The notes below the pieces were generated by a model. That model saw only the letters and a program-made list of their open reading frames with translations, searched no databases and had not been told where the DNA came from. From sequence record LR745208.1: 64,000 bases of DNA. One strand, given 5' to 3'. Within the stretch, counting starts at the first letter, position 1; every line of letters starts with the position of its first letter. Made by a program: the position numbers and the translations under genes. Positions 10,114 to 40,537 of this stretch are shown here, piece by piece.

Positions 10114-10320
10114 TTACGGACACACGATCTTGCTGTTGGCACGGACCCACTCACGGGCCTTGGTCTGGCTGGTGAACACAATGTGCTTGGGGGAACCATC
10201 CGGTAGGAACTCCCCAGGAATCACCACCTTGAAGGGGCGGCTGGGCTGGGCACTGAATTCGATGACTAGTGGGCTGCCCTGAACTTGCGTGATCCTGGTG
10301 TTGTATCGGTTGGTCGCCAT
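10114..10320 (-). CDS. small protein, paralog of 12998..13183
   Basis: MATNRYNTRITQVQG. Confidence 0.75.
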   Translation of the reverse strand: MATNRYNTRITQVQGSPLVIEFSAQPSRPFKVVIPGEFLPDGSPKHIVFTSQTKAREWVRANSKIVCP

Positions 10321-10332
10321 GGTTGGTCTCGC

Positions 10333-10377
10333 TCTCACAACCTTATCGGTATGGGGGGTCCCACAATTAGGAGAATC
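10333..10377 (-). promoter_or_regulatory. sigma28-type promoter cassette (variant)
   Basis: CTAAT-N15-ACCGATA. Confidence 0.7.
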
Positions 10378-10395
10378 AACTCAGCAAGAGGCCCA

Positions 10396-10632
10396 TCAAG
10401 ACAGGGCCACCATCACGGCTTCCCTGGCATCGTTGGACCCCCGGAAGGGGGCGCCGGGCTGGTCTCTACGACCCACAACCCGACCCGTCACAGTCATGGA
10501 GGTATCCCGGACCTCCACCCGGCCATCTGCCCGAAGGGAGACCCAGAAGTGCCGGTGACGCCCACGGGAAACGCTCACATGCACCGTCCCCGCAAGGTCC
10601 GTGCACGAATGATTTCGGGTCATTGTTTCCAT
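10396..10632 (-). CDS. hypothetical protein
   Basis: ATG after cassette. Confidence 0.65.
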   Translation of the reverse strand: METMTRNHSCTDLAGTVHVSVSRGRHRHFWVSLRADGRVEVRDTSMTVTGRVVGRRDQPGAPFRGSNDAREAVMVALS

Positions 10633-10638
10633 GGGCAT

Positions 10639-10684
10639 CCTCACAACCCTATCGGTACCAAGGGGTGACTTTTTAGTGAAATCG
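10639..10684 (-). promoter_or_regulatory. sigma28-type promoter cassette
   Basis: motif copy. Confidence 0.8.
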
Positions 10685-10849
10685 AACATCCCTAGGCCAG
10701 AAGGTGCTGACCTGTATGTAGGCACTCTGATATCTCATGGGCCAGCTTGGGGTTCACGGATCGAACCAGCTCTCGCAGGGCTGGCAGCGAGAAGCTCATG
10801 GCTTCTGCAACCGTCCAACCGAGGGTCTTGGCAATTCGTTCGTGGAGGC

Positions 10850-11053
10850 TCATGAGTTCACCAGGGCCAGCGCGGAATCCTTGGCAGCCTTCTCCGCACC
10901 CTGACCCGTGTACTCCTGGCGGACCGTGTTCGAGTCAGAGCTACCGTCCGGGAGCAGGTTCAGGTAGACCACGAAGTAGCCCGCACGAAGACGGAAGACT
11001 CGGTGGATCCGGGTTCCCTGAGGATTCGCTGGGACGGTCAGGATGGGTTTCAT
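10850..11053 (-). CDS. hypothetical protein
   Basis: ATG after cassette. Confidence 0.7.
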   Translation of the reverse strand: MKPILTVPANPQGTRIHRVFRLRAGYFVVYLNLLPDGSSDSNTVRQEYTGQGAEKAAKDSALALVNS

Positions 11054-11060
11054 GGTCTAG

Positions 11061-11107
11061 CCTCACAACTCTATCGGTATGGGGCAAGGCACTTTTTAGA
11101 GAAATCG
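11061..11107 (-). promoter_or_regulatory. sigma28-type promoter cassette (back-to-back with 11118)
   Basis: motif copy. Confidence 0.8.
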
Positions 11108-11117
11108 TGATGCAGTC

Positions 11118-11163
11118 GGAATTTCCTAAAAGTCATCCCTCCCGTACCGATAGGGTTGTGAGG
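11118..11163 (+). promoter_or_regulatory. sigma28-type promoter cassette
   Basis: motif copy; heads 11164. Confidence 0.8.
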
Positions 11164-11301
11164 ATGCCCATGACCGTTGAAGAACTCGAAGCTATGGACC
11201 GTTCCTGGCCTTCCTGGATGCTAGGGGGGTTGGTCGGCCGGAGGTCCTGGCCCGGAGTCGGGCCCGAATGGCCGAGCTGGCTGAGCAGTTTCACCAGATG
11301 A
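11164..11301 (+). CDS. small hypothetical protein
   Basis: ATG after cassette. Confidence 0.55.
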   Translation: MPMTVEELEAMDRSWPSWMLGGLVGRRSWPGVGPEWPSWLSSFTR

Positions 11302-11354
11302 CCCAAGAACCGGGACAGGTGTGAAGAGATGGTGCCCCAGAGAGTAAAGGGAGC

Positions 11355-11600
11355 ATGACCGAGCTGCCACAATTCACCAAGGGCAAGAAGTACCACATTC
11401 TGCTCAGGTGTGATCCCACAGGCCAGGAGGCGTACTTCAAGGGAACCTTCCTGGAACTCTCACACCCTGCCCCAACAAGATCCGCCTACGCCTTGTTCGA
11501 TGGGACCCTCCATCTGGGTCGGGGCTGGCCCGATGAAACCAGTGAGGAATTCATCGTTCAGGCAGATCACATTCATTCCGTTCAGGAGATTAAATCATGA
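11355..11600 (+). CDS. hypothetical protein
   Basis: RBS, coupled ORF. Confidence 0.7.
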   Translation: MTELPQFTKGKKYHILLRCDPTGQEAYFKGTFLELSHPAPTRSAYALFDGTLHLGRGWPDETSEEFIVQADHIHSVQEIKS

Positions 11601-11920
11601 AACAGTACCTGAGCATGACCACCAAGCGCAGCGACCTTCGCAGTGCGGCAATTGGTTGGGGCAACATCGAGGACCCCCGGCTGGTGGTACAGGGGAAGTC
11701 TATTGGGCACACGCCCTGCATCCATGGCCCCACGTATGACTGTGTCCTGAGGGCACTTGCGGACGGCTGGGAACTTCTTGGTCCCTCTGAGTCTCTGGAT
11801 GATGATGGTACCTTTTCTTGGGACTTGGTCCGGGATTGTGACCACGGGAGTGCAAGAGAAGCCTTCCTTCCAGAGTTCAATCGGCAGATGGCCAGGATGC
11901 GAAAGGAAGAGGGCCGATGA
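11597..11920 (+). CDS. hypothetical protein
   Basis: ATGA overlap. Confidence 0.65.
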   Translation: MKQYLSMTTKRSDLRSAAIGWGNIEDPRLVVQGKSIGHTPCIHGPTYDCVLRALADGWELLGPSESLDDDGTFSWDLVRDCDHGSAREAFLPEFNRQMARMRKEEGR

Positions 11921-12762
11921 TGAGCAGCCACGTCGTGATCTACCATGCCGGTTGCCCCGATGGGTTCACGGCTGCCTGGGTGGTTTGGGAAAACCTGTAC
12001 GGGAATGATGCGGAGTACATCCCTGCCAAGTACGGGGATGCTCCACCCGATGTCACTGGGAGGACAGTTCTCATCGTAGACTTCTCCTACTCCCGTGATG
12101 TGCTCCTCAAGATGCATACGGAAGCCAAGTCCCTGCTCGTGTTGGATCACCACAAGGGTGCTCGGGAGGCTCTTGAGGGGCTTCCCTTCTGCACCTTCGA
12201 CATGGCACGGTCTGGCGCCGGGATGGCCTGGGATCACATCCGTGGCAAGAAGGATCGCCCTTGGCTGGTCAACTACGTGGAGGACAGGGACCTATGGCGA
12301 TGGGCCCTCGATGACTCCAAGGCGGTCAATGCCTGGGTCGGGATCCAAGATTTCCACGATGATTCCACAGACCACCTTCCGACCCATGCCTTCTGCAATT
12401 GGAGTAGGATGTTGGCGGCCGGGTCTGGGGTGGCGAAGCGGAATGGCAAGCCCATTCTCAGGTTTCAGGCCCAGTACGTGGCCAACATGGTCAGGCAGGC
12501 GCAGAGGGTTTCCTTCGGAGGATTCGACAACATCCCCCTGGTCAACTGCACCCGCCCCCTGATTGACGAGGTTCTCAACAAACTGGCAGAAACATCCTTC
12601 CTGGCCATCGGCTGGTCACAGGAGGCAGATGGCCGGTTCCGTTACTCGCTTCGTTCCAGCAAAGAGAATGGAAATGTTGACGTTTCCTACCTTGCCCAGG
12701 CCCATGGTGGCTCAGGTCACCAGAACGCCGCGGGCTTCACTCTCGACAAGCTGTTGTTTTGA
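11917..12762 (+). CDS. DHH/DHHA1 phosphoesterase
   Basis: YH..CPDGF, LDHHK, GGSGH..AAGF. Confidence 0.88.
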   Translation: MMSSHVVIYHAGCPDGFTAAWVVWENLYGNDAEYIPAKYGDAPPDVTGRTVLIVDFSYSRDVLLKMHTEAKSLLVLDHHKGAREALEGLPFCTFDMARSGAGMAWDHIRGKKDRPWLVNYVEDRDLWRWALDDSKAVNAWVGIQDFHDDSTDHLPTHAFCNWSRMLAAGSGVAKRNGKPILRFQAQYVANMVRQAQRVSFGGFDNIPLVNCTRPLIDEVLNKLAETSFLAIGWSQEADGRFRYSLRSSKENGNVDVSYLAQAHGGSGHQNAAGFTLDKLLF

Positions 12763-12953
12763 TCGTGGACATCCAGGACACCGCAAAGGCCCTCATAGGG
12801 GCTGGGGACCGCCTCCGGGCAGCCAAGGCCGCTTGGGTCACCCGGGGACCAGAATCGCCCTGGTACCGTCTCTGTGACGAACTGCGGGAGGCAGAGGTGC
12901 AATACCTACAGGCATTCGAGACCCTGAGGGCCGCCCTGGAACGATTTCACTAA
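12759..12953 (+). CDS. hypothetical protein; its TAA stop is the -35 of next promoter
   Basis: CGATTTCACTAA overlap. Confidence 0.65.
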   Translation: MIVDIQDTAKALIGAGDRLRAAKAAWVTRGPESPWYRLCDELREAEVQYLQAFETLRAALERFH

Positions 12954-12987
12954 AAAGTTGCCTTCTCGTGCCGATAGGGTATTGAGG
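12942..12987 (+). promoter_or_regulatory. sigma28-type promoter cassette
   Basis: motif copy. Confidence 0.8.
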
Positions 12988-12997
12988 CTAGACTAAC

Positions 12998-13183
12998 ATG
13001 GCGACCAACCAATACAACACCCGGATCACTCAGGTACAGGGCTCGGCGATCGTGATTGAGTTTTCTGGCCAGCCCTCGCACCCCTTCAAGGTGGAGATTG
13101 CGGGACAGCGTTGGGTCTTCAAGTCCCAGACCAGGGCCCGAGAGTTCGTTCACAGCCGAATGCCAGTGGGTTCAAACGAGTAG
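12998..13183 (+). CDS. small protein, paralog of 10114..10320
   Basis: MATNQYNTRITQVQG. Confidence 0.75.
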   Translation: MATNQYNTRITQVQGSAIVIEFSGQPSHPFKVEIAGQRWVFKSQTRAREFVHSRMPVGSNE

Positions 13184-13193
13184 GTGTCCTGGT

Positions 13194-13239
13194 CGATTTC
13201 ACTAAAAAGTCACCCCCCCATACCGATAGGGTTGTGAGG
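13194..13239 (+). promoter_or_regulatory. sigma28-type promoter cassette
   Basis: motif copy. Confidence 0.8.
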
Positions 13240-13241
13240 AC

Positions 13242-13520
13242 ATGAACATGACCACCTACCGAGTCGCAGTAAGCCTTTTCGCAGTCCGGGTCCGTGTGGG
13301 CACGGAGCACATCCTGTATGTGGCCGAGAAGCCCCAGTGGGATGGCAGCTGGGCAACCAGCGATGTCACGCAGGCCAAGACCTGGACGACCAAAGGCTGG
13401 GCGCGCAAGTGGATCCAGGAGCGTGCATTCCGACAGATCGAGTCGGCCAGCGTCATCCCCCAGGACTGTCACAACCAGAACTATGCCTGGGTGGAAACTG
13501 TTTTGGGTCGTCAGTCCTGA
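13242..13520 (+). CDS. hypothetical protein
   Basis: ATG after cassette. Confidence 0.75.
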   Translation: MNMTTYRVAVSLFAVRVRVGTEHILYVAEKPQWDGSWATSDVTQAKTWTTKGWARKWIQERAFRQIESASVIPQDCHNQNYAWVETVLGRQS

Positions 13521-13578
13521 AGTCGCATTTGCCTCAACCACCCCGATGAGGGGGATGTTCCGGAAGGGATGTAAAATC

Positions 13579-13938
13579 ATGAGCAAGATCAAGACTGTCC
13601 ACCCGAATCTGACCGCCCCCGCTGCTCTGTCCAAGAAGGGCAAGGAAGCTGTTCAGAAGGTCCTGGACGTGATGGCCAAGCATGGCTGCAACCTCGCGGA
13701 AGATGCCACCGGGGGCTGCCCTGCCTTCCGGACCCCCGAGGAATGGGCTGCCAGGGGAGAGTCCTACGGGCTCAAGTCCGTTGTGGTCGTGGTCCATGAC
13801 GGTGGGGACGTGGGCAACTACTTCAGCTTCGATCGGGAGCAGTACAATCTCGTCGAGGATGTGAATGCTGCCCTGGGGAAGATTGGGCTGTACGCCGAAC
13901 AGTGCACCTGCTGGTACAGCGCCATCTACCCGATTTGA
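13579..13938 (+). CDS. hypothetical protein, paralog of 40223..40537
   Basis: VVVHDGG..GLYAEQCT.WY. Confidence 0.75.
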   Translation: MSKIKTVHPNLTAPAALSKKGKEAVQKVLDVMAKHGCNLAEDATGGCPAFRTPEEWAARGESYGLKSVVVVVHDGGDVGNYFSFDREQYNLVEDVNAALGKIGLYAEQCTCWYSAIYPI

Positions 13939-14006
13939 TAGTACTTCCCAGGACTTAAGCGAATCCTGGTCTCAGCAAGCAGGTTGCCGTGTACGGTGTC
14001 CCTGGA

Positions 14007-14052
14007 CGATTTCACTAAAAATTGGTCCCCTCATGCCGATAGGGTTGTGAGG
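14007..14052 (+). promoter_or_regulatory. sigma28-type promoter cassette
   Basis: motif copy. Confidence 0.8.
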
Positions 14053-14059
14053 ACGAACC

Positions 14060-14263
14060 ATGAACACCAACGACGCAACATTCTCGAACCGGGTCAACGT
14101 CAACGGTGCCGAAATCAACGAGGCAATCATTGCCCGGATCCGCACGGCGGTTGCCTACGAGTGTTCAACCGACGAGATCATGGACATGATCGAGGCAACT
14201 TCGACCTGCCCTACCCGTTGGGTAGCCTTCATGGCTGAGGCAATCCGCTCGGGCCGGGCATAG
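14060..14263 (+). CDS. hypothetical protein
   Basis: ATG after cassette. Confidence 0.75.
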   Translation: MNTNDATFSNRVNVNGAEINEAIIARIRTAVAYECSTDEIMDMIEATSTCPTRWVAFMAEAIRSGRA

Positions 14264-14268
14264 ACCTA

Positions 14269-14315
14269 CGATTTCGCTAAAAAGTCCCCTTCCCGTACCG
14301 ATAGGTATTTGAAAG
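14269..14315 (+). promoter_or_regulatory. sigma28-type promoter cassette
   Basis: motif copy. Confidence 0.8.
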
Positions 14316-14325
14316 CGAGAACTCC

Positions 14326-14565
14326 ATGGACGCCATCGTTTGGATCTCCAACCGCAACCATCCCACACAGACCACCTGCAAGGTCCTCCGAACAACCCCG
14401 ACCACGATCATCGTGGACATGGTCTATCCGCACACGACAACCAACCTCAAGTTCCGGCGCTCGGACGGCAACATGACCGGGGGCAAGGTGTCCTTCTGGC
14501 TGGACGCGGAGTCCCTGAAGCAGATCAACCGAGAGATCCTTGCCACCCACACAGGGAACTGCTAG
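14326..14565 (+). CDS. hypothetical protein
   Basis: ATG after cassette. Confidence 0.75.
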   Translation: MDAIVWISNRNHPTQTTCKVLRTTPTTIIVDMVYPHTTTNLKFRRSDGNMTGGKVSFWLDAESLKQINREILATHTGNC

Positions 14566-15269
14566 TCCCAGTCGAGCATGCAGCCAAGATGGGTTGCATG
14601 CTCTTCAATGCTGTCCGCCATATCCTCAGCGGTCCTAGCCTGCTGCCCAGCGTCCTCTTCCATGACAGGACACCATGGGGCATTGAAGGACGTAGTGGGG
14701 ATACCTCGTGGGGTTCCTACCATAATTTTCTCAACGGGGCCAACCCCTGCCAGGGTCCTCGTGTAGTGGAGCCCATCGGGGCTTGGCTTGACCGGCTTCC
14801 CAAGGATTTCGGGTACATGGGCCGCACATATGACGGGTGCCCCACCAGCCAGGACAAGCTTCTCAACCCCATGGGAGACCTCACTGTATTGTCCAGGCTG
14901 GCGATAGACACGGCTCAGGAGGCTCTTGATGGCACCCCTTCCTTCGGCGCTACCATTGGACCCTGCTAGACCTCCCTTGACACCGAACCGGGTTTTCTTG
15001 CATAGCTTGAAGGCAACAGGCGTTTCCCCATCGAAGTAAATTGACCATACATCAAACTCATTCAACCCTTGGGGGGAGGAAATGATCAGCCCCAATTGCC
15101 TGTAGGTAACTTCATACATTGCCCACACTGCATCCCTGTACTGGTCGTAGTCCCCATGCCCTATCTCAGTCCATTGCCCCATTGCTTCCTTGAGAAGGGG
15201 GAGGAGGTGGGGCCGAAGAGCCGGATTCTCGTGGGCAAGTCGGACCAGTTTGGATCGAAGGGTCACCAT
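14562..15269 (-). CDS. protein with TLRSKLVRLAH leader
   Basis: shared N-terminal motif. Confidence 0.8.
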   Translation of the reverse strand: MVTLRSKLVRLAHENPALRPHLLPLLKEAMGQWTEIGHGDYDQYRDAVWAMYEVTYRQLGLIISSPQGLNEFDVWSIYFDGETPVAFKLCKKTRFGVKGGLAGSNGSAEGRGAIKSLLSRVYRQPGQYSEVSHGVEKLVLAGGAPVICAAHVPEILGKPVKPSPDGLHYTRTLAGVGPVEKIMVGTPRGIPTTSFNAPWCPVMEEDAGQQARTAEDMADSIEEHATHLGCMLDWD

Positions 15270-15288
15270 GAAACGGTAGGGGTATAGG

Positions 15289-15334
15289 CGATTCCGCTAA
15301 AAATCTCCCCTCTCGTGCCGATAGGGTATTGAGG
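15289..15334 (+). promoter_or_regulatory. sigma28-type promoter cassette (identical to 15584 copy)
   Basis: 58 bp identity including ATGAACATGA. Confidence 0.8.
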
Positions 15335-15336
15335 AC

Positions 15337-15576
15337 ATGAACATGAAGAAGCCAGCCAAGAAAAGCTACTCCCCGCGGAAGAGCAACAAGTTCGAGTTCA
15401 CCTACGTGGAGTGGGATGAGGACACAGCGGCTCACTGTGTCTTCGGGAAAGACAGTGGGTTCGCCTACGCGGCCTTCTCGGATAAAGGTGAGGCAGACAC
15501 CTACAGTGAGGACCACAACCAGAACACGCGGGATGCCATCCAGCATGTTACAGAGACCAGCCTGTTCCCCCGGTAG
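15337..15576 (+). CDS. hypothetical protein
   Basis: ATG after cassette. Confidence 0.7.
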   Translation: MNMKKPAKKSYSPRKSNKFEFTYVEWDEDTAAHCVFGKDSGFAYAAFSDKGEADTYSEDHNQNTRDAIQHVTETSLFPR

Positions 15577-15583
15577 GTAGGTC

Positions 15584-15629
15584 CGATTCCGCTAAAAATC
15601 TCCCCTCTCGTGCCGATAGGGTATTGAGG
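15584..15629 (+). promoter_or_regulatory. sigma28-type promoter cassette
   Basis: motif copy. Confidence 0.8.
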
Positions 15630-15631
15630 AC

Positions 15632-16189
15632 ATGAACATGACCACCCTACTCTACATCCACGGCCTGGAGTCTGGCCCTCGGGGGGCGAAGACTGAGGCC
15701 CTTGAGGCTGCGGGATTCACGGTGGTTTCCGAGCAGATGCCCTGCCCTCCCATCCGTGACCTGAAGGGACCAGAGGGCGCTCAACTTTTCGAGCAAAGCC
15801 TTATGATCCAGCTTCAGGCACTGGCAACCCATAAGATCGATGCCATCGTGGGGTCTTCTTTTGGAGGGGCAGTGGCCGTTGAGCTGTTGCTCCGTGGGCT
15901 CTGGGCTGGCCCCACCCTACTGCTATGCCCCGGTCACGAACTCATGGCGGAGCGAACCGGGTACCAGCTTCACTGGGAAGGGCTCGAAGGTCTCCCGGGC
16001 GAAGTCACCAAGCAGGTACTGGTGGTCCATGGTAGGGGTGATGCTGTGGTTCCCGTAGGGCACTCACAGAACCTAGTGGCAGGATCCCAGGCGACCCTGG
16101 TTCTTGTGGATGATGACCACCGCCTCTCGGCCACATCGAACACCCAGCAACTCACCAGCCTGCTTGCCCTCATCGGTGTGAGCCCCTAG
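15632..16189 (+). CDS. alpha/beta hydrolase (YqiA-like esterase)
   Basis: YIHGLES, GSSFGG, HG..D..VP, DDHRL. Confidence 0.85.
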   Translation: MNMTTLLYIHGLESGPRGAKTEALEAAGFTVVSEQMPCPPIRDLKGPEGAQLFEQSLMIQLQALATHKIDAIVGSSFGGAVAVELLLRGLWAGPTLLLCPGHELMAERTGYQLHWEGLEGLPGEVTKQVLVVHGRGDAVVPVGHSQNLVAGSQATLVLVDDDHRLSATSNTQQLTSLLALIGVSP

Positions 16190-16190
16190 T

Positions 16191-16237
16191 TGATTTCGCT
16201 AAAAAGTCCCCCTCCCATACCGATAGGTATTTGAAAG
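16191..16237 (+). promoter_or_regulatory. sigma28-type promoter cassette
   Basis: motif copy. Confidence 0.8.
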
Positions 16238-16252
16238 CGGGACCCACCCACT

Positions 16253-16474
16253 ATGAAGCCCACATACATCATCGTTCTTACCCACACCACCACGAACGTC
16301 AAAACCTACGTGGCGGCCCGGACCCAGGTGGACGGTAGCTGGTCCACTCCTCACCAGGATCTCGCTCGTGTTTACAAGACCCTGGGTGGGGCGATGCGCT
16401 GGCTGGCCGACCACCCCGAGATCGCCCTTGGTACCGGTGGCATCCAGGGCGACATTGTCACGGTCCAGGTGTGA
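16253..16474 (+). CDS. hypothetical protein
   Basis: ATG after cassette. Confidence 0.7.
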   Translation: MKPTYIIVLTHTTTNVKTYVAARTQVDGSWSTPHQDLARVYKTLGGAMRWLADHPEIALGTGGIQGDIVTVQV

Positions 16475-16728
16475 CAACCGAGAGTAAACCCCTAACCAAC
16501 CCGAGTGCCATCGCCCTCCAGGAAGCCCTGGACCAGATGGAGTACAGCAAAACTTGCATCCGCGAGAATCGGGGTTACGACAAGGAGCTAGCTCGCGAAA
16601 GCTATGTGTCTGGCCTTGGTGAGGTGCTGATCCCGGCCATGGAGATCGCCCTTGGGGACATCGAGAAGGGGCAGGACCTAGAGAAGATCGCCAGGATGAT
16701 GGTCAAGATACTGGAAGGTAAGTCATGA
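16471..16728 (+). CDS. hypothetical protein
   Basis: GTGA overlap. Confidence 0.65.
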   Translation: MTTESKPLTNPSAIALQEALDQMEYSKTCIRENRGYDKELARESYVSGLGEVLIPAMEIALGDIEKGQDLEKIARMMVKILEGKS

Positions 16729-16949
16729 GCGACTGGAAGAACTCGAAGGGGGAGTCCGTGTATATTGAATCCATCCCCTGGGTGGAGGAGGGGATGAAGG
16801 TCTACGTTCCCAAGCAGGGGGATGAGAGGGCCTACACCGCTGGCATCGTTATGATTGCTACGGGCGATGCAGCAAGGGTCTTGACCCAACTCGGGTCCCA
16901 CTGGTATCGGCTCCGGGACTGTGTGAAAATCTCACAGTCGAATTCTTAG
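16725..16949 (+). CDS. hypothetical protein
   Basis: ATGA overlap. Confidence 0.65.
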   Translation: MSDWKNSKGESVYIESIPWVEEGMKVYVPKQGDERAYTAGIVMIATGDAARVLTQLGSHWYRLRDCVKISQSNS

Positions 16950-16951
16950 GT

Positions 16952-16997
16952 CGATTTCGCTAAAAAGTCCCCTTCCCGTACCGATAGGGGATTGAGG
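16952..16997 (+). promoter_or_regulatory. sigma28-type promoter cassette
   Basis: motif copy. Confidence 0.8.
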
Positions 16998-17002
16998 ATC
17001 AC

Positions 17003-17552
17003 ATGAGATGTCTCTGAAGCATCCGTCCAGAAGGCCGAACAGGAACAACAGCGGGTTGCAGCTCAGCGGGCCTACAGAGTTGAGGGACGGAAAACATTTG
17101 CCAAGAGGGCTGCCACGGTGGTTGGGGTTGTTCTGGTCGCGTTTCTTGGTGGCCTTGGGCTCATGCACGCGCAGGGCAACAGGGTAAGGGACGAACTCAC
17201 GACCCGCATGGAAGCCGTACGCCAACGTCGGGCGGACATCTACTCAGCCACCCAGAGAGAAGCCCACATAGTGGCCTACTGGGAGCAAGTGAGTGGCATG
17301 TCAGCCCCAAGGGAACGTGACGTTTGGGAAGCCCCCCTTTCACCACGGGATCGCGCTCTGGAACGAAGCCGGGCAGAACGCATCCGTGCCAGGGATGCCG
17401 AGATCACAGGTGCTGAAAACCGAGTTCACATTGCCATCCGCCGCTATGATGAGGCTGCGGCCAACTACAACCGTTACGCAGAATTAGTCGATCCATCCGT
17501 TTCTCGTGGGTTCCCCCACCATGTCCCCTACTCCAACGAGGTTTCCCCATGA
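17003..17552 (+). CDS. lemA: LemA-like membrane protein; extra base just after ATG 17003 (in-frame ORF from 17118)
   Basis: TM segment then QRRAD and ENRVHIAIRRYDEA..YN. Confidence 0.6.
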
Positions 17553-18382
17553 ATTCGATTTCTCGTTTCGGGCTCAGCATGTTGGCTGTGCTCCTCACCC
17601 TGACCGTTGCTACGTCGGCCATCGCTTACCCGGCCATCACCCACCCGGTGACAGACCTTGCGGGAGTCCTGACTCCAGCGGAGGTTGAGGATATTGCCGC
17701 CCGGGAGCTGGACCATTTCCAGCGGACCCATGTCCAGATTGCCGTGCTAACGGTGCCCACCACCAATGGGGAACCCATTGAGGACTTCGCCAACGGAGTT
17801 GCGGGTCAATGGCGTGGAGGGCAGGCCGGGCAGAACAATGGGGTCCTAGTCGTGCTGGCCATCCGGGATCACCGATCACGGATCGAAGTCGGCTCAGGGC
17901 TCGAAGCCCAGGTGACCGATTCACAGGCAGTCGAACTGCTGGACAGCATGCGCCCATCCTTCCGGGCCAGCCAGTTCGGAGATGGCCTGCGGGGCATCGT
18001 GGGTGCCCTGATTGTGGCCACAGGGGGGAACCCTCAGATGGTCACACAGGCTGGCTGGCGCTACCATCCAATGCCCGCACAGCACAGTAGTGGGGACCAT
18101 ACCGTGCTCATTCTGTTCATCATCCTGGGGGGTTTTCTGTTCCTACTGATGCTGTGGTGGATGGCGCGAGACGAGCGGGGCAGCTACGGTTACAGCAGTG
18201 GTCGAAGCTACGGTGGGAGTGGGAGTAGCTCAACCTTCGTGTACCTGAACAACGACAGTTCGAGTTCAAGCAGCTCAAGTTCGAGTAGCTGGGACAGCGG
18301 GTCAAGCTCAAGCTCCAATGACTCCAGCTACGGTGGTGGGGGCGGTGACTTCGGTGGTGGTGGCGGAAGCAGCGGCTGGTAG
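17549..18382 (+). CDS. TPM-domain (YgcG-like) membrane protein
   Basis: VTDLAGVL, IEVGSGLE, TM, Gly/Ser tail FGGGGGSSGW. Confidence 0.9.
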   Translation: MNSISRFGLSMLAVLLTLTVATSAIAYPAITHPVTDLAGVLTPAEVEDIAARELDHFQRTHVQIAVLTVPTTNGEPIEDFANGVAGQWRGGQAGQNNGVLVVLAIRDHRSRIEVGSGLEAQVTDSQAVELLDSMRPSFRASQFGDGLRGIVGALIVATGGNPQMVTQAGWRYHPMPAQHSSGDHTVLILFIILGGFLFLLMLWWMARDERGSYGYSSGRSYGGSGSSSTFVYLNNDSSSSSSSSSSSWDSGSSSSSNDSSYGGGGGDFGGGGGSSGW

Positions 18383-25322: not shown

Positions 25323-25368
25323 CGATTTTGCTAAAAATTGTGCTCCCCGTGCCGATAGGGTATTGAGA
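25323..25368 (+). promoter_or_regulatory. sigma28-type promoter cassette
   Basis: motif copy; heads 19-codon ORF 25373..25432. Confidence 0.8.
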
Positions 25369-25437
25369 AGCGATGGAGAAGGTCCTTCGCGAGCGTGGCT
25401 GGAAGGTCACCTGCTACTACCAGATCGACTGAGGGGA

Positions 25438-25753: not shown

Positions 25754-25799
25754 CGATTTCGCTAAAAAGTCCCCTTCCCGTACCGATAGGGTTGTGAGG
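25754..25799 (+). promoter_or_regulatory. sigma28-type promoter cassette
   Basis: motif copy. Confidence 0.8.
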
Positions 25800-31283: not shown

Positions 31284-31429
31284 ACACCCGGTCAGGGCAT
31301 AGGCCAAGTAGGGAGCCCCGAAATTGGAACAGGCAGGTCCCCTCCCCGGGTTCCTGCCTGTTTGGCTGGGGAAGATGAGAATCGGCTCCTTGGTGGTGCC
31401 CATGGTCACATAATTACCGGTACTTGTTT

Positions 31430-31643: not shown

Positions 31644-31690
31644 TCCTCAACTACCTATCGGCACGGGAGGAGGACTTTTTAGTGAAATCG
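31644..31690 (-). promoter_or_regulatory. sigma28-type promoter cassette
   Basis: motif copy. Confidence 0.8.
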
Positions 31691-32212: not shown

Positions 32213-32259
32213 TCCTCAACTACCTATCGGTACGGGGATGGGACTTTTTAGCGAAATCG
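32213..32259 (-). promoter_or_regulatory. sigma28-type promoter cassette
   Basis: motif copy. Confidence 0.8.
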
Positions 32260-32586: not shown

Positions 32587-32595
32587 GACTGCTTC

Positions 32596-32640
32596 CTTCC
32601 TTCCCTATCGGCACGAGAGGGGTAGTTTTTAGCGAAATCG
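32596..32640 (-). promoter_or_regulatory. sigma28-type promoter cassette
   Basis: motif copy. Confidence 0.8.
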
Positions 32641-33077: not shown

Positions 33078-33123
33078 CGATTCCACTAAAAATCCCCATT
33101 CTCGTGCCGATAGGGTATTGAAG
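33078..33123 (+). promoter_or_regulatory. sigma28-type promoter cassette
   Basis: motif copy; heads 33133. Confidence 0.8.
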
Positions 33124-33339: not shown

Positions 33340-33617
33340 GCTTCACCGCTACTGGCCAGTGACGTGATCTCGCAGGAGAGGCATGCTTCCAGGCCAGACC
33401 CAATGTTGTCCTGTCGGACGGCCTTCACAGCATCCAGGTGTTGGCCCGACTGCCGCAGCAACACTGCATACAGGACACTCGGGGGCTCTGGTTAGAACCC
33501 GAGGGTGACCCTCGCCTTGAGGGCCCGCATGCCCTGGCGGGCCAGTGACAACTCACTAAAGTACACCTTGCTGGTGCTGTGCATGGGAAAGTAGACCAAC
33601 TTTTTAGTGAATTCGAC

Positions 33618-34893: not shown

Positions 34894-34939
34894 CCTCAAT
34901 ACCCTATCGGCACGAGAAGGAGGATCTTTAGTGAAATCG
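34894..34939 (-). promoter_or_regulatory. sigma28-type promoter cassette
   Basis: motif copy. Confidence 0.8.
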
Positions 34940-35057
34940 ACCTGCCTCAATGCCCACCGGGGCCAAAACCTAACCCAAAGGGCACCATCAGCAGCCTCAA
35001 GTTGACAAATAGTTCAATGGTTTCGTCAAGACCTATGGATTGGTCAGACTCCCAGAG

Positions 35058-35165
35058 CTATGGGTACGGGAGGCTCTGCAGGGAGTCCAGCAACTTCTCG
35101 GTCTGGGCCCGACGCACCTGCAACTGGGCCACAATTGCCTTGACGAGCTGGTTGGGATCCCGCAT
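35058..35165 (-). pseudogene. fragment paralogous to C-terminus of 37525..37923
   Basis: MRDPNQLVKAIVAQL vs MRDPNQLVKAVVAGL. Confidence 0.6.
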
Positions 35166-35298: not shown

Positions 35299-35345
35299 CC
35301 TTCAAATACCTATCGGTATGGGAGGGGGACTTTTTAGGGAAATCG
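35299..35345 (-). promoter_or_regulatory. sigma28-type promoter cassette
   Basis: motif copy. Confidence 0.8.
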
Positions 35346-35536
35346 ACATTGGAAGAGCTACCAACATCCTTTCCTCAGACCGAGCTCGCTCATCATGGTC
35401 ATCCTGAGGGGGTGGGTTCATGGTTGGGATCCTCGCTGGGGCTGTTCGGAATGTCAAGGGCGGAGTAGGCTCGAAATTGAAGTTGTAGTGCTCGTTGCGC
35501 TGACCCAGGGACGGAGCCCACACCCCTGGGTCTTGT

Positions 35537-35637
35537 CCACCGGACCCAAAACCACACCCAAATGACACCAATGAGACACATCGGCTTACGAAATCATTGG
35601 ACTTTTCAGAATTGGTCACTTTTGGGGGTCCAGGACA
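35537..35637. repeat. ~100 bp R2 element, full copy
   Basis: CCAAAACC left arm, TACGAAATCATT core, TTGGTCACTTTTGGGGGTC right arm. Confidence 0.8.
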
Positions 35638-36068
35638 GTCCCCACGGCGAGCGCCCCTGCAACCCGATCCCAGAAGGCCTCGGTATCCATGTCATCGAGG
35701 TGGATCCTGACCTTCGTGATGCCATAGTCCCGTTTGATGGTGTTTTCAGCGATCCTGCGGTACCCAGCATCCTTGCTCTTTAGGGCTGTGAAGACTTCGT
35801 TGGCTGCCTTCAGGGTGTCCTTGAACCCCCGTACCTCATGCTGGAACACCACCACGAGGTTGCGATCCAGGAGGGTACTCACCTCAGTCCTCCAATGGGC
35901 AACCCACTTGGTCTGGCCATTCTTCTCGGCCAGCTGAGCCTTGTAGAACTCCAACAGAGCCCCTCCCGTGTGTTCCTCCACCTTGTCCTTGAAGGTCTCT
36001 CGGCTGTAGGCCATGGCCCTAAGAATACGCGTAGCGACCCGTTTGGCTGTTGGTTTCAAATCCGGCAT
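35616..36068 (-). CDS. protein with KRVATRIL leader; ends in R2-encoded LDPQK
   Basis: 150 aa ORF. Confidence 0.75.
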   Translation of the reverse strand: MPDLKPTAKRVATRILRAMAYSRETFKDKVEEHTGGALLEFYKAQLAEKNGQTKWVAHWRTEVSTLLDRNLVVVFQHEVRGFKDTLKAANEVFTALKSKDAGYRRIAENTIKRDYGITKVRIHLDDMDTEAFWDRVAGALAVGTVLDPQK

Positions 36069-36273: not shown

Positions 36274-36408
36274 CAGTACAGTCCGGTGGGACTCGAACCC
36301 ACATCCACGGTTTACAAAGCCGCTGCTCTGCCTGCTGATCTACCTCAATGTAGGTTATCCTAGGTTCCTACACCCACTTCCACCAGCTGAGCTACTTGGA
36401 CTGTACTG
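36274..36408 (-). tRNA. tRNA-Thr(UGU)-like with 52 nt D-loop insertion
   Basis: TAGCTCAGCTGGT..AGAGC, arm GCGGC-TTTGTAA-ACCGT, T arm GTGGG-TTCGAGT-CCCAC. Confidence 0.65.
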
Positions 36409-36616: not shown

Positions 36617-36662
36617 TTACAAACTACTATCGGTACGGGAAGGTGACTTTTTAGGGAAATCG
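36617..36662 (-). promoter_or_regulatory. sigma28-type promoter driving the RNA cluster
   Basis: motif copy, no RBS/ATG downstream. Confidence 0.8.
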
Positions 36663-37463: not shown

Positions 37464-37509
37464 TCCTCAATATCCTATCGGTACGTGGAGGCAACTTTTA
37501 GTGAAATCA
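37464..37509 (-). promoter_or_regulatory. sigma28-type promoter cassette
   Basis: motif copy, 14 nt spacer. Confidence 0.75.
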
Positions 37510-37524
37510 TATTCGGCCCCCAAT

Positions 37525-37923
37525 TCAGCCCTGCCCGTCTTCGGACAGCATGGAACTAATCAACTTCTCGGCCGTGTCCCGACGCTCACGTAACCCGGCC
37601 ACAACCGCTTTGACCAGCTGGTTCGGATCCCTCATGGGCCCGATATTGCTCACAATTGTGTGTTCCCCACACACGATGTAGTGGCCATCCCCAGTTGGGT
37701 AAATTGAGAACTCCTTCGTGAACCTCAGGCAATAGTGCCAGCCGAGATTTTCCCACACGTCCACAACCCACCCCCCAGTCCTCATCCTCTTCAGGAGCTT
37801 CTGGGCTTCCCGCCCAGCGGTTTCGTATGCCTCCCGGGTACACCCTCCCCCGCAAGCCGGAGAACAATAGACCCCCCCGCGAAGTACCGGTGTCCATGAC
37901 AGTTTCTTTGCAACAGGCTTCAT
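37525..37923 (-). CDS. hypothetical protein
   Basis: YCSPACGGGC, VWENLGWHY. Confidence 0.75.
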   Translation of the reverse strand: MKPVAKKLSWTPVLRGGVYCSPACGGGCTREAYETAGREAQKLLKRMRTGGWVVDVWENLGWHYCLRFTKEFSIYPTGDGHYIVCGEHTIVSNIGPMRDPNQLVKAVVAGLRERRDTAEKLISSMLSEDGQG

Positions 37924-37953
37924 TTCTTCAAGTCTCCAGTTTCAATGCCAGGG

Positions 37954-38313: not shown

Positions 38314-38372
38314 TGGTCAATCCTTTTATCAGTCGGGCTGTATCCTCAGAGATCCAAACTGGACCCCACGCT

Positions 38373-38417
38373 ACCTCACTACCTATCGGCACGGGAAGCC
38401 AACTTTTTAGCAAAATC
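38373..38417 (-). promoter_or_regulatory. sigma28-type promoter cassette
   Basis: motif copy. Confidence 0.8.
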
Positions 38418-38496
38418 CCACGGCGGCCCTATGTGGCCCTATACCTCGAAGCTCAGTTCCTTTCAGCATGGAGAAATCGGCTGTAGCCCTCACAAA

Positions 38497-38868
38497 TCAG
38501 GCCCGACTCCAAGGTCCCTGCTTGGGACTGGAGACCCACTCCAAGGGTTCCCTGCCCAGCTTCCCAGAATCAAAGGTCACGGTAACCAGAGCCAGCCTAC
38601 CAGACAGGGCTTCGGTCCCGCCTATACGAGCGAACTCAAGTGGGACCCCAGCCTCAGTACACAGCTGACGGGCCTGCCCCTCCGCCCGAAGGCAGGCTTG
38701 ATGGTTACTAGGCCCAAGAGACCGCAACTCCTCAACCCCCTCGCTCGCAGAAGCCACACGATCCCTCTCAGCTCGGGTAGGACCCATGTTGGCCAGGAAG
38801 GTAGCAATCACGTCACCGCGTTCCCACGTCGTCTCACTCATGTCCCCTGTTACGCCCTCCGGGGTCAA
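38497..38868 (-). CDS. hypothetical protein
   Basis: ORF. Confidence 0.55.
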   Translation of the reverse strand: MTPEGVTGDMSETTWERGDVIATFLANMGPTRAERDRVASASEGVEELRSLGPSNHQACLRAEGQARQLCTEAGVPLEFARIGGTEALSGRLALVTVTFDSGKLGREPLEWVSSPKQGPWSRA

Positions 38869-38957
38869 AACCTAACCTAAATGGCCCCTGACTCCCTCAC
38901 GGCCTTACGAAATCATTAGGTTTTCTCGGATTGGTCACTTTTGAGGGTCTCGGACAG
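38859..38957. repeat. ~100 bp R2 element, full copy
   Basis: as 35537. Confidence 0.8.
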
Positions 38958-39234
38958 GACCCCGTTCCACGAATCGTCGGTGGCAGTCTGCACCCACCGG
39001 AAACTCTCCCATGTACCCAGGTGCACTGGCGTCACTGTCCTGGTCCCCCCATGCCGCACCACCGTCGATCACAATGGCAAGATACGGGTAGTCCCCCTCC
39101 TGGCTTTGTTCGCCCATACACCGCACCGGGCGCTCACAGATTGCACACTGCGCCTCATCCGACCTGTACGCATGGGCTCTGCCCGTCCCCATCGCGAACG
39201 GAGGAACCGCAAATGATCCATCTGGCCTCTTCAT
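38935..39234 (-). CDS. hypothetical protein ending in R2-encoded DPQK
   Basis: CAIC..C; stop inside R2. Confidence 0.7.
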   Translation of the reverse strand: MKRPDGSFAVPPFAMGTGRAHAYRSDEAQCAICERPVRCMGEQSQEGDYPYLAIVIDGGAAWGDQDSDASAPGYMGEFPVGADCHRRFVERGPVRDPQK

Positions 39235-39289
39235 CCCAATCGCGAGGTGCGGTGTAATAACTTCACACGTCAGTTCATGCCCCGTCCGA

Positions 39290-39335
39290 TTCTCGCGTCT
39301 CGTCGGTATGATGTCTCAACTTTTAACCGAAATCG
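39290..39335 (-). promoter_or_regulatory. degenerate sigma28-type cassette (ACCGACG -10)
   Basis: CGATTTCGGTTAAAAG..CATACCGACG. Confidence 0.55.
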
Positions 39336-39354
39336 GCCATTGCCATATGTGGCC

Positions 39355-39681
39355 CTATACCTCGAAGCTCAGCTCCTTGAACAGGTCCTTCGCAGCCTCA
39401 AGCCCCAGGGCCCGATCAACCACCTCCAGGCGTACCACCCTGCGAAGCCCCTCAACAGCCTCCCTGATCGATGAACAGAACTCGGATGCAAAGGTGGTGA
39501 GATCCCCATCAGGTCCCAAGTCAGCCATGGCACGGTACTCAGGACCAGCTGCCCGGGGATAGACACACACCCGAATTGGTAACCCCCCAAACACACCAAG
39601 CTCGTCCTTGGTCAAGATATGAGGACGATCCTGAGCCTCATCACTGTATTGGATATCTGTCAGCTTGTTCATCATCTTCAT
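39355..39681 (-). CDS. hypothetical protein
   Basis: ATG after cassette. Confidence 0.7.
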   Translation of the reverse strand: MKMMNKLTDIQYSDEAQDRPHILTKDELGVFGGLPIRVCVYPRAAGPEYRAMADLGPDGDLTTFASEFCSSIREAVEGLRRVVRLEVVDRALGLEAAKDLFKELSFEV

Positions 39682-39684
39682 GTC

Positions 39685-39731
39685 ATCACTACCCCTATTG
39701 GTAACGGGAGACCCCACTTTTAGGAAAATCG
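39685..39731 (-). promoter_or_regulatory. sigma28-type promoter cassette (ACCAATA variant)
   Basis: motif copy. Confidence 0.7.
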
Positions 39732-39742
39732 ACCTACTTCGA

Positions 39743-39845
39743 TGCCCACCGGGGTCAAAACCTAACCAAAATGGCCCCCGCTAGCCTTACCGGCTGACGT
39801 AATCATTAGGTTTTCTCGGATTGGTCACTTTTGGGGGTCCAGGAC
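39743..39845. repeat. ~100 bp R2 element, full copy
   Basis: as 35537. Confidence 0.8.
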
Positions 39846-40226
39846 AAGGCCCTCCGTTGGGACTAGATCCCGGCTCCGAAAAAGGACCGGATAGTTCGCC
39901 TCAGGGAGACCTTCCAGGTAGACTGTGTACCGACCGGTGCTGGTACAACATTTCCGGACCTCTCCGTACAGTCCCTTGAAGGGACCCTTTTCACGAACCC
40001 GGACCCGAACGCCACTTCCAGGCTGGAAGGAGCCAATTAGGGTTGCAGGCTCATTGGAAATGGAGCCGGGGACATCTGCCATAAGGATGAGCCTGTCCCC
40101 ATCATCAACCCCAAGACGATGGAGGCCCCGGCGGGCATCCACATCGAGTATGACCTTGGTGTTCCCAGGCATCTTCCCGCTTTGCAGGATCCGCTGCAAT
40201 GACTCGAAAAGTTCTTGGACGGTCAT
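39825..40226 (-). CDS. hypothetical protein (SH3-like C-terminus) ending in R2-encoded LDPQK
   Basis: stop inside R2. Confidence 0.7.
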   Translation of the reverse strand: MTVQELFESLQRILQSGKMPGNTKVILDVDARRGLHRLGVDDGDRLILMADVPGSISNEPATLIGSFQPGSGVRVRVREKGPFKGLYGEVRKCCTSTGRYTVYLEGLPEANYPVLFRSRDLVPTEGLVLDPQK

Positions 40227-40537
40227 CGTACAACCCTCAGAGCGGGCTTCCCTCGCATGGCTACCGGGAGGGGATTGATGACGGCATACCAGCCCGTACA
40301 GAGCTCAGCATACACACCACAAGCCTGGAGGGCTCCATCCATCTCTACCGCACGGTCACCCTCAGGGTCGAAGAAGGGGGCAAGGTTACCTCCTCCATGG
40401 ACCACCACGAGAAGAGCACTGGGATGGACTTGGTTCCACTCCCCCACAGAGGCATTCCATTCCTTGGGGGTGTAGAACTTACCGTCAGGAATATCCCCAA
40501 CGAGGTTCTGAACCACTTGTCGGAGCTTGAGGGTCAC
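40223..40537 (-). CDS. paralog of 13579..13938
   Basis: VVVHGGG..GVYAELCTGWY. Confidence 0.7.
   Translation of the reverse strand: MTLKLRQVVQNLVGDIPDGKFYTPKEWNASVGEWNQVHPSALLVVVHGGGNLAPFFDPEGDRAVEMDGALQACGVYAELCTGWYAVINPLPVAMRGKPALRVVR

What the first reader, a model, noticed from the sequence alone, without database searches (positions are those of the whole stretch)
10114..40537. Promoter cassettes look like recombination joints for gene shuffling
Seen: cassettes abut or overlap the previous stop (TAA at 12951-12953 is the -35); 58 bp identical copies at 15289 and 15584; back-to-back pair at 11061/11118; dispersed paralogs (10114/12998; 13579/40223); stranded gene tails after promoters (MEKVLRERGWKVTCYYQID at 25373 resembles the C-terminus of 49767..50102; 35058 resembles the end of 37525); the same 33 bp gene end precedes two promoters (38430, 39346); a half cassette at ~33585-33615. 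Known: PeSL promoter cassettes mediate modular shuffling in T4-type phages. Inference: an analogous promoter-anchored cassette exchange system.
Basis: partly seen in the sequence, partly recalled or inferred. Interest (0 to 1): 0.65.

Follow-up and report, generated by a model that had tools for sequence, protein, structure and literature searches.

The report
Repeated promoter cassettes as recombination joints
A 485-kb uncultured groundwater phage puts the same 46-base promoter-like cassette in front of many small genes of unknown function, and wild relatives show that gene modules are gained or lost at these cassettes (once by recombination between two identical copies), much as described for T4-type phages.

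Summary
A 46-nt cassette (CGATTTCRCTAAAAAKT-N-CCYYCYCGTRCCGATAGGGTnTTGAGG) occurs about 55 times in the 485-kb genome and 28-30 times in the window. It always points towards a ribosome-binding site and start codon 0-25 nt downstream, and it usually abuts the previous stop codon.

Wild near-identical strains, in three assemblies from at least two samples (one built at k=141), carry a single cassette where the window has cassette 15289, a 77-aa gene and cassette 15584. This is a precise 295-bp deletion between the two identical 58-bp copies. An 87%-identical relative keeps the gene.

Five of seven structural differences among relatives have a junction within 25 nt of a cassette (P about 8e-5 against random positions, 0.01-0.04 against gene junctions). 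Several of those junctions lie beside the cassette, with the other end inside a gene. Ordinary homologous exchanges (one crossover, seven conversion patches) and two indels lie away from cassettes.

The cassette has no stem-loop and no sigma-70 consensus. No integrase was found, and circles could not be tested. Promoter function is inferred, not shown. I read it as a PeSL-like variant, not a dedicated exchange system.

The parts
10333..10378 (-). weak cassette heading gene 10114-10320, a paralogue of 12998-13183
   Evidence: PWM 24.7 bits; DNA homology with the 12942 unit runs from the cassette's 3' end into the gene
10639..10684 (-). cassette
   Evidence: PWM 58 bits
11061..11107 (-). cassette with a 1-nt longer spacer; one half of the divergent back-to-back pair
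   Evidence: (D7)
11118..11163 (+). cassette; the other half of the divergent pair, heading the run of genes that includes the DHH gene
   Evidence: PWM 52 bits
12942..12987 (+). cassette whose TAA (12951-12953) is the stop of ORF 12759-12953; left junction of the segment replaced in relative L105
12998..13578 (+). segment present here but replaced in relative L105 by a 58-aa N-terminal extension: 61-aa gene, cassette 13194 and 90-aa gene
13194..13239 (+). cassette
   Evidence: PWM 62.8 bits
14007..14052 (+). cassette
   Evidence: PWM 64 bits; orthologue in L105 is 43/46 identical
14269..14314 (+). cassette
   Evidence: PWM 65 bits
15289..15346 (+). cassette plus 12-nt leader and start; first copy of the identical 58-bp repeat
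15343..15576 (+). 77-aa ORFan between the identical cassettes; absent from three wild assemblies
15584..15641 (+). second copy of the identical 58-bp repeat; with the first it bounds the 295-bp deletion polymorphism
16191..16236 (+). cassette; in L105 and L106 an extra 177-aa gene lies between the upstream stop (16189) and this cassette, and the cassette's 5' half is divergent
16952..16997 (+). cassette; L105 carries about 2.5 kb extra (four more cassettes and eight small genes) starting right after it
16998..17552 (+). 16-nt filler, then a 5'-truncated, out-of-frame homologue of L105's 217-aa gene: a stranded gene body behind a cassette
25323..25368 (+). cassette followed by the 19-aa mini-ORF 25373-25432, which resembles the C-terminus of 49767-50102
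25754..25799 (+). cassette heading gene 25808-26122, whose N-terminus is homologous to the N-terminal extension of L105's 181-aa gene
31645..31690 (-). cassette
32214..32259 (-). cassette
32595..32640 (-). cassette
33078..33123 (+). cassette, divergent from the 32595 array
33585..33615 (-). half cassette: 5' block only
34894..34939 (-). cassette, preceded by a copy of the second repeat family
   Evidence: (D6, D8)
35300..35345 (-). cassette; downstream lie a 40-aa ORF and then the 35058-35165 fragment homologous to the end of 37525-37923
36617..36662 (-). cassette without a nearby ORF start; a partial tRNA-like Rfam match lies downstream at 36285-36343
37465..37510 (-). cassette with a 1-nt register shift
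38373..38418 (-). cassette preceded by the shared 37-nt gene end 38426-38462
   Evidence: (D10)
39300..39378 (-). decayed cassette (about 39300-39340) preceded by the second copy of the 37-nt gene end (39342-39378)
39686..39731 (-). diverged cassette heading gene 39355-39681
   Evidence: (D3)
40824..40869 (-). cassette

Best explanation
The 46-nt cassette is most likely a phage promoter joined to a ribosome-binding site. It heads short modules of small, non-essential genes in the variable left 160 kb of the genome.

The same roughly 46-58 nt is repeated at many non-allelic sites. It therefore occasionally serves as the homology for ectopic recombination, or for slippage, by the general recombination machinery; the phage has its own RecA/UvsX-like protein. 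Such events delete a module and, in the reverse direction, could insert one.

This has happened at least once in the wild population: recombination between the identical cassettes 15289 and 15584 removed the 77-aa gene.

Other rearrangements near cassettes look like illegitimate joins. They survive because they leave a cassette in front of the next gene, and they produce the truncated genes, shared gene tails and half cassettes seen in the window.

Shown: the repeat family and its anatomy, the deletion polymorphism, and the enrichment of junctions at cassette borders. Inferred: promoter function, the recombination mechanism, and any insertion of modules or circular intermediates.
For: Motif anatomy:
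- Two nearly invariant blocks (CTAAAAA and CCGATAGG) lie 14 nt apart.
- Every copy is oriented towards a ribosome-binding site and start codon.
- Divergent pairs sit where gene direction switches.
- Orthologous cassettes in the 87% relative keep both blocks and vary in the spacer.
- There is no RNA structure or covariation.

Modules: downstream genes are small (median 94 aa against 129 aa) and have no PHROG or Pfam family.

Recombination shown once:
- L128, L129 and L130 have one cassette and lack 295 bp, with flanks 99.7-100% identical. One of these assemblies was built at k=141, longer than the 58-bp repeat.
- L125, L126, L127 and L131 have both cassettes.
- The outgroup L105 has the gene.

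Enrichment: 5 of 7 structural events have a junction within 25 nt of a cassette. P=8e-5 against uniform positions and 0.012-0.038 against gene junctions.

Opportunity:
- Window-type and L105-type phages co-occur in the same samples.
- L106 is a natural recombinant of the two.
- A RecA-family gene is present.
Against: - Only one event has both junctions inside cassettes.
- For the other cassette-associated events the junctions are next to, not within, the motif. The partner junction lies inside a gene or at a start codon without a cassette. One of these events is a TnpB/IS insertion.
- A 58-bp perfect direct repeat 295 bp apart would delete by slippage whatever its function.
- Homologous exchange between the two phage types happens inside genes. 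Cassettes are not special islands of identity between orthologous regions: only 2 of 27 exact runs of 30 nt or more are in cassettes.
- Orthologous cassettes remain each other's best match, so exchange among cassettes is rare.
- There are few events, and the comparison contigs were found starting from genes near cassettes.
- No transcript data exist, so promoter function is unproven. There is no sigma-70 consensus, and no phage sigma factor or RNA polymerase was recognised.
Confidence: 0.6

Rival explanations
1. The cassettes are ordinary promoters and nothing more. They play no mechanistic part in rearrangement. Junctions coincide with them because only rearrangements that keep whole promoter-gene units survive selection. 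The single cassette-to-cassette deletion is a trivial consequence of a chance local duplication.
For: - Most cassette-associated junctions lie outside the motif, with non-cassette partners.
- Against a gene-junction null the enrichment is only P=0.01-0.04 from seven events.
- Crossovers and conversion patches occur freely inside genes.
- Cassettes are not homogenised.
Against: - The one clean event does use cassettes as the homology.
- Half and decayed cassettes, shared leaders and first codons among different genes, and cassette-plus-gene-tail duplications show breakage and joining in or at cassettes themselves.
- The enrichment holds even against gene junctions.
Confidence: 0.3
2. The cassette is an RNA-level element, such as a 5' leader that binds a translational regulator or marks a processing site. 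Transcription would start further upstream.
For: - The motif is contiguous with the ribosome-binding site and lies at a fixed distance from the start codon.
- No known promoter consensus matches it.
Against: - There is no conserved structure, no covariation, and the folding z-score is about 0.
- The motif often overlaps the upstream gene's stop codon.
- It occurs as divergent pairs at strand switches, where no upstream transcript exists.
Confidence: 0.07
3. The cassettes are sites for a dedicated site-specific recombinase, an integron-like gene-cassette system.
For: - One module is removed precisely between two cassettes.
- Many small ORFan modules are each bounded by the element.
Against: - No tyrosine recombinase was found, and there is only a sub-threshold resolvase match far away.
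- The element has no inverted-repeat or hairpin architecture.
- It sits 5' of genes together with a ribosome-binding site.
- Other junctions do not fall at a fixed position in the motif.
Confidence: 0.03

Closest known systems
PeSL (promoter-early stem-loop) cassettes of T4-type phages (Arbiol et al. 2010, PMC2839356; Comeau et al. 2014, PMC4122927)
   Same: - A short repeated regulatory cassette heads small ORFans in hyperplastic regions.
- Indels between close relatives are bounded by the cassettes.
- Recombination between neighbouring copies removes the gene in between.
- No dedicated recombinase is involved; the phage's own general recombination system is assumed.
   Different: - There is no stem-loop terminator component.
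- There is no sigma-70 consensus or AT-rich UP element. Instead there are two unusual blocks with a pyrimidine-rich spacer.
- The cassette is fused to the ribosome-binding site and abuts the previous stop codon.
- The host and the polymerase factor are unknown.
- Mini-circles were not tested.
- Most junctions lie beside the cassette rather than within it.
- The genome is a 485-kb uncultured phage whose closest database relatives are only about 36% identical in a DHH protein.
Arrays of early promoters in large lytic phages (T4, T5, phiKZ-type); from general knowledge
   Same: Many copies of one promoter consensus are concentrated in the region of small host-takeover or accessory genes, all co-oriented with those genes.
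   Different: - Here the conservation runs through 46 contiguous nt, including the spacer.
- There is direct population evidence of recombination between copies.
Integron attC gene cassettes
   Same: Small single-gene modules are bounded by a repeated element and can be lost precisely.
   Different: - There is no integrase.
- The element lies 5' of the gene and is promoter-like, not a 3' hairpin site.
Boundary or linker sequences proposed for modular exchange in lambdoid phages (Susskind and Botstein model; from general knowledge)
   Same: Short conserved intergenic sequences are proposed as crossover points between otherwise unrelated modules.
   Different: Those are allelic boundaries between functional modules in different genomes. 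Here the repeats are dispersed within one genome and head single small genes.

Membership tests
PeSL cassettes (T4-type phages) | Strong sigma-70-consensus early promoter with an AT-rich upstream region | tested here: not met
   The sigma-70 consensus scan flags none of the cassettes. The conserved blocks are CTAAAAA and CCGATAGG. Promoter function itself is inferred only.
PeSL cassettes (T4-type phages) | Adjacent stable stem-loop acting as a terminator | tested here: not met
   There is no consensus structure on either strand, the mean folding z-score is -0.12, and there is no covariation. Terminator-like sites are not above shuffle expectation and are not next to cassettes. In about three quarters of cases the cassette starts within a few nt of the previous stop.
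PeSL cassettes (T4-type phages) | Preferential location in hyperplastic regions, flanking small ORFans | tested here: met
   47 of 55 copies lie in the first 160 kb. Downstream genes have a median of 94 aa against 129 aa genome-wide. Ten tested genes have no PHROG family.
PeSL cassettes (T4-type phages) | Indels between closely related phages bounded by the cassettes, leaving a single or chimeric cassette | tested here: met
   A 295-bp deletion between cassettes 15289 and 15584 is seen in L128, L129 and L130. Other events are only adjacent to cassettes, so this feature is met once and is inconclusive as a general rule.
PeSL cassettes (T4-type phages) | Mini-circles formed by recombination between neighbouring cassettes | not testable with these tools
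   The only read-laying run used Logan contigs, which break at the cassettes. Its 'goes back' joints are explained by other cassette copies.
Integron gene cassettes | IntI-type tyrosine recombinase | tested here: not met
   PF00589 has no match in the 485-kb genome, while the control genomes all match.
Integron gene cassettes | attC-type imperfect inverted repeat at the 3' end of each cassette | tested here: not met
   No hairpin potential was found. The element is 5' of the genes, together with the ribosome-binding site.

The most novel reading that the evidence does not exclude
The cassettes are the working parts of a recombinase-free gene-cassette system of huge phages. Modules of one cassette plus one or a few ORFans would be excised as circles and re-inserted at other cassettes, including those of co-infecting relatives. 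The promoter array would then act as a shared docking platform that drives accessory-gene turnover in these very large genomes.
Probability: 0.12. Interest if true: 0.8.

Novelty: new variant of a known kind. Interest (0 to 1): 0.5.

Why it matters
How huge phages build up and turn over hundreds of small genes of unknown function is an open question. Here, natural population data from groundwater metagenomes show that a repeated promoter-type cassette marks the edges of variable gene modules. At least once the cassette served as the recombination substrate for losing one.

This extends the PeSL idea, known only from cultured T4-type phages, to an unrelated uncultured 485-kb phage, with a cassette of different design. 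It also gives a concrete, testable handle: a defined 46-nt motif and a defined polymorphic locus. These could be used to study transcription and genome plasticity in this phage group.

Tried and rejected
- Motif scans of IMG/VR and JGI metagenome contigs gave only single chance matches. None scored on the full matrix.
- The phage database holds no close relative.
- Laying Logan contigs of four runs on 11050-17049 (6,000 letters) was not informative for circles or deletions. The contigs break at the cassettes. Nearly all 'joints' and loose ends are other cassette copies of the same genome, or collapsed repeat unitigs. This call did reveal an about 85% relative.
- Walking outwards from both ends of L105 found no longer contigs.
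- Contigs found through clusters of genes in 21-38 kb were 99.9-100% identical to the window, with no rearrangement. The minus-strand array at 31-41 kb therefore could not be compared with a diverged relative.
- Homologues of gene 35616-36068 led only to distant huge-phage contigs at 55-68% aa identity, too far for breakpoint mapping.
- The idea that the 58-bp identity arose by gene conversion after the split from L105 was considered and left open. L105's copies differ at only 3 of 46 cassette positions, so the duplication predates the split.
- The idea that cassettes are islands of identity favouring allelic crossover was rejected.
- Assembly artefact as the explanation for the deletion was rejected. 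It appears in three assemblers, including k=141, and in at least two samples.
- The search for a phage sigma factor found only two proteins with a region-4 helix-turn-helix and no region 2. No T7-like or multisubunit RNA polymerase was found.
- Rfam found nothing at the cassettes.


Full report
**What the window is**

The window is identical to the first 64 kb of LR745208.1, an uncultured 485-kb phage. The whole genome is held as G000. Sequencing runs that contain it are groundwater metagenomes.

The region encodes accessory-type proteins among many small ORFs without any family. The recognisable ones are a DHH phosphoesterase, a TPM phosphatase, an ADP-ribosyltransferase, a DnaJ-domain protein, DNA methyltransferases, an HNH endonuclease and TnpB.

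**The motif**

Repeat finding and a position-weight scan define a 46-nt cassette: CGATTTCRCTAAAAAKT-nn-CCYYCYCGTRCCGATAGGGTnTTGAGG.
- Two blocks are nearly invariant, CTAAAAA and CCGATAGG. They are separated by a pyrimidine-rich 14-nt spacer.
- The score distribution is bimodal. About 50 sites exceed 40 bits and almost nothing lies between 0 and 40.
- There are 55 hits in the genome. There are also two indel or diverged copies, one half copy and one decayed copy.
- Every copy points towards a purine-rich ribosome-binding site and a start codon 0-25 nt downstream.
- In 32 of 44 cases with a same-strand upstream gene, that gene's stop lies within -17..+19 nt of the cassette start. Three times the stop is the TAA inside CTAAAAA.
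- Divergent pairs sit where gene direction switches.
- Downstream genes are small, with a median of 94 aa against 129 aa.

All seven details in the finding were confirmed, with the corrections given under the observation check.

**Is it a promoter?**

This is inferred, not shown.
- For: the bipartite conservation, the orientation, the position at heads of gene runs and at strand switches, and the fact that orthologous copies in a relative keep the two blocks and vary in the spacer.
- It is not a structured RNA. There is no consensus fold on either strand, the z-score is about 0, and there is no covariation.
- It does not match the sigma-70 consensus, and no terminator-like hairpins accompany it.
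- The genome shows no recognisable sigma region 2, T7-like polymerase or beta subunit. Two paralogous proteins carry only a sigma region-4-type helix-turn-helix.
- No RNA run holds the phage.
- More distant huge-phage contigs show their own bipartite motifs just upstream of start codons, for example CGGATCA-N13-GCCCGTACTC in L118. This is a hint of a clade-wide promoter design, which I looked at only superficially.

**Relatives**

The motif is absent from IMG/VR and JGI contigs. No close phage genome exists in the phage collection. Relatives were reached through proteins instead.
- A 90%-identical homologue of gene 16253-16474 led to L105, a 9.7-kb contig that is 87.6% identical to window 11327-18291. 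It also led to L106, 9.3 kb.
- Cluster members led to the near-identical strains L121, L122 and L124 (98-100%), which cover about 1-16.5 kb. They also led to L115-L117, which cover 21-30 and 32.5-38.5 kb and show no rearrangement.
- Both phage types occur in the same samples. ERZ909574, ERZ909577 and ERZ909580 each hold an L105-type and a window-type contig.

**The decisive event**

L121 aligns to window 5705-15346 and to 15584-16493, and the two alignments overlap by 58 nt. A look-up of the downstream 183-aa protein returned both forms.
- L128, L129 (the same contig as L121) and L130 have the 235-aa minus-strand gene, one cassette, then the 183-aa gene.
- L125, L126, L127 and L131 have two cassettes with the 77-aa gene between them.
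- The junction sequence is the upstream flank of cassette 15289, one 58-bp unit, and the downstream flank of cassette 15584. The flanks are 99.7-100% identical to the window.
- L130 is a megahit k=141 contig, so 141-mers must span the 58-bp repeat. Repeat collapse is therefore excluded.
- L128 and L130 probably come from one sample, because they share the same start. L129 comes from another sample.
- L105, the 87% outgroup, has the gene and both cassettes, which are 43/46 alike. The single-cassette form is therefore most simply a deletion by recombination or slippage between the two identical cassettes.
- This pair is the only identical pair among 1,225 cassette pairs.

**Other structural differences**

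| Event | What differs | Relation to cassettes |
|---|---|---|
| E1 | A 2.3-kb TnpB element sits in the 7-nt gap between a stop codon and cassette 1600 in the window and L124. It is absent from L121 and L122. | Upstream of base 1600 the haplotypes are 90% and 74% identical; from 1600 on they are identical. |
| E2 | 427 nt extra at 3999 in L121 and L122. | No cassette nearby. |
| E3 | 5611-5705 is replaced by 666 nt in L121, L122 and L124. | No cassette nearby. |
| E5 | 12998-13578 (61-aa gene, cassette 13194, 90-aa gene) is replaced in L105 by 182 nt. That stretch encodes an N-terminal extension fused to the 13579 gene and is homologous to the N-terminus of gene 25808. | The left junction is at the leader and start codon behind cassette 12942. 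The right junction is at start codon 13579, with no cassette. |
| E6 | L105 and L106 carry an extra 177-aa gene between stop 16189 and cassette 16191. It is 40% identical to the gene behind cassette 70998 of this genome. | The cassette's 5' half is only 21/28 identical between window and L105, while the 3' half is 17/18. |
| E7 | L105 carries about 2.5 kb extra, with four more cassettes, eight small genes and a TnpB-element end. | It starts right behind cassette 16952. In the window the cassette is followed by 16 nt and then codon ~43 onward of the homologue of L105's 217-aa gene, out of frame with either nearby ATG. |

Counting the deletion as E4, five of seven events have a junction within 25 nt of a cassette. 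The expected number is 0.6 under uniform placement (P=8e-5). Against gene junctions, 20 of 81 of which carry a cassette, P is 0.012-0.038.

There are caveats. There are only seven events, the definitions were made after seeing the data, one event is an IS insertion, and the contigs were found from genes near cassettes.

**Background recombination**

- L106 is identical to L105 up to window position ~16541 and identical to the window from ~16563. This is a crossover inside gene 16471-16728.
- The near-identical strains differ from the window mainly in seven short dense mismatch patches: 1807-1976, 4034-4089, 4966-5066, 5423-5562, 7214-7335, 11785-11812 and 13836-13879. All lie inside genes or at junctions without cassettes.
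- Between L105 and the window there are 27 exact runs of 30 nt or more, and only two are in cassettes.
- Orthologous cassettes are 38-46/46 identical and are mostly each other's best match.

Homologous exchange between these phages is therefore frequent and not tied to cassettes. What is special about the cassettes is that they are repeated at non-allelic sites.

**Footprints inside the genome**

- 130 of 208 intragenomic DNA matches are cassette-to-cassette, and most are confined to the motif.
- Some matches extend into the leader and first codons. For example, 13194 and 15584 share 17 nt after the cassette although their spacers differ. A CTAGACCAACATG-type leader recurs in several units here and in L105.
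- One match extends into the upstream gene's last 37 nt (D10).
- Together with the half and decayed cassettes and the stranded gene pieces, these are traces of past breakage and joining in or beside cassettes.

**Mechanism and machinery**

The genome encodes a RecA/UvsX-family protein (152.7 bits). It encodes no tyrosine recombinase and has only a sub-threshold resolvase match. This fits general homologous recombination or replication slippage on short repeats, not a site-specific system.

**Comparison with PeSLs**

PeSLs are defined by five features (PMC2839356, PMC4122927):
- a sigma-70-consensus early promoter with an AT-rich upstream region;
- an adjacent stem-loop terminator;
- a location in hyperplastic regions next to ORFans;
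- indels between close relatives bounded by the element;
- mini-circles.

Here the location and one bounded indel are met. The promoter consensus and the stem-loop are not met, and circles are untestable. The cassette therefore works like a PeSL in one shown case, but it is not a member of that family by composition. I found no paper linking PeSL-type elements to huge or jumbo phages outside the T4-likes, and none citing this record.

**Verdict**

This is a new variant of a known kind of element, of moderate interest. The strongest single result is the natural 295-bp cassette-to-cassette deletion polymorphism.

Noticed in passing
window 7629-7705 (+); also 5878-5952 (+): ARAGORN calls a tRNA with anticodon UUA, which would read the stop codon TAA. 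Rfam scores it as a tRNA at 29.5 bits, just above threshold. A tRNA-Arg(CCT) lies nearby. TAA ends 150 of my 686 predicted genes, and the standard code gives 91% coding density, so general recoding seems unlikely.
   Followed up: partly
window 1-1578 (ORF 114-1535): A TnpB/IS605-type element (Cas12f1-like TNB and OrfB_IS605 domains) has two more full copies in the genome (91% and 77% aa) plus fragments. This copy is polymorphic in the population: it is absent from L121 and L122. It sits in the 7-nt gap between a stop codon and cassette 1600. A matching element end lies inside the L105-specific insert.
   Followed up: partly
window 34953-34994, 35480-35650, 38800-38970, 39680-39860, 41040-41180 (minus strand); weak copy at 59735: A second repeat family of 42-130 nt lies downstream of gene ends, and twice directly upstream of a cassette. 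Its core has a possible GGGGCC...GGCCCC stem with a 16-nt loop, and one copy shows an apparently compensatory change. It has no T-run and its function is unknown (D5/D6/D8, 68).
   Followed up: partly
window 14562-15269 (-), 20283-20732 (-), 30891-31433 (-), and about seven more loci elsewhere in the genome: About ten proteins share a conserved N-terminal stretch of about 30 aa (60-90% identity) but have different C-termini. They have no Pfam or PHROG family. One of them lies directly next to the polymorphic 15289/15584 module.
   Followed up: partly
window 36285-36343 (-): A partial tRNA-like Rfam match (35.6 bits, model positions 7-64) lies downstream of cassette 36617, which has no ORF start nearby. 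ARAGORN does not call it. In distant relatives the homologue of the next gene (35616-36068) sits directly behind a DDE transposase.
   Followed up: no
L118 (407-kb JGI contig, distant relative), 1-300, 9100-9830, 14900-15630: There are three CRISPR-like arrays (36-nt repeat, about 37-nt spacers) within 20 kb of a huge-phage-like contig. The contig also has its own bipartite motif (CGGATCA-N13-GCCCGTACTC) just upstream of start codons. L119 has a third variant of such a motif.
   Followed up: no
G000:C1:75474-76265 (-) and G000:C1:294919-295512 (+), outside the window: Two paralogous proteins (45% identical) contain only a sigma-70 region-4 type helix-turn-helix, with no region 2. They are candidates for a promoter-recognition or appropriation factor, but this was not tested.
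   Followed up: partly
window 16471-16728; L106/L107: L106 and L107 are natural mosaics. They are identical to the 87% relative on the left and identical to the window phage on the right, with the crossover inside a gene at 16541-16563. This shows that the two phage types co-infect and recombine in the aquifer.
   Followed up: yes
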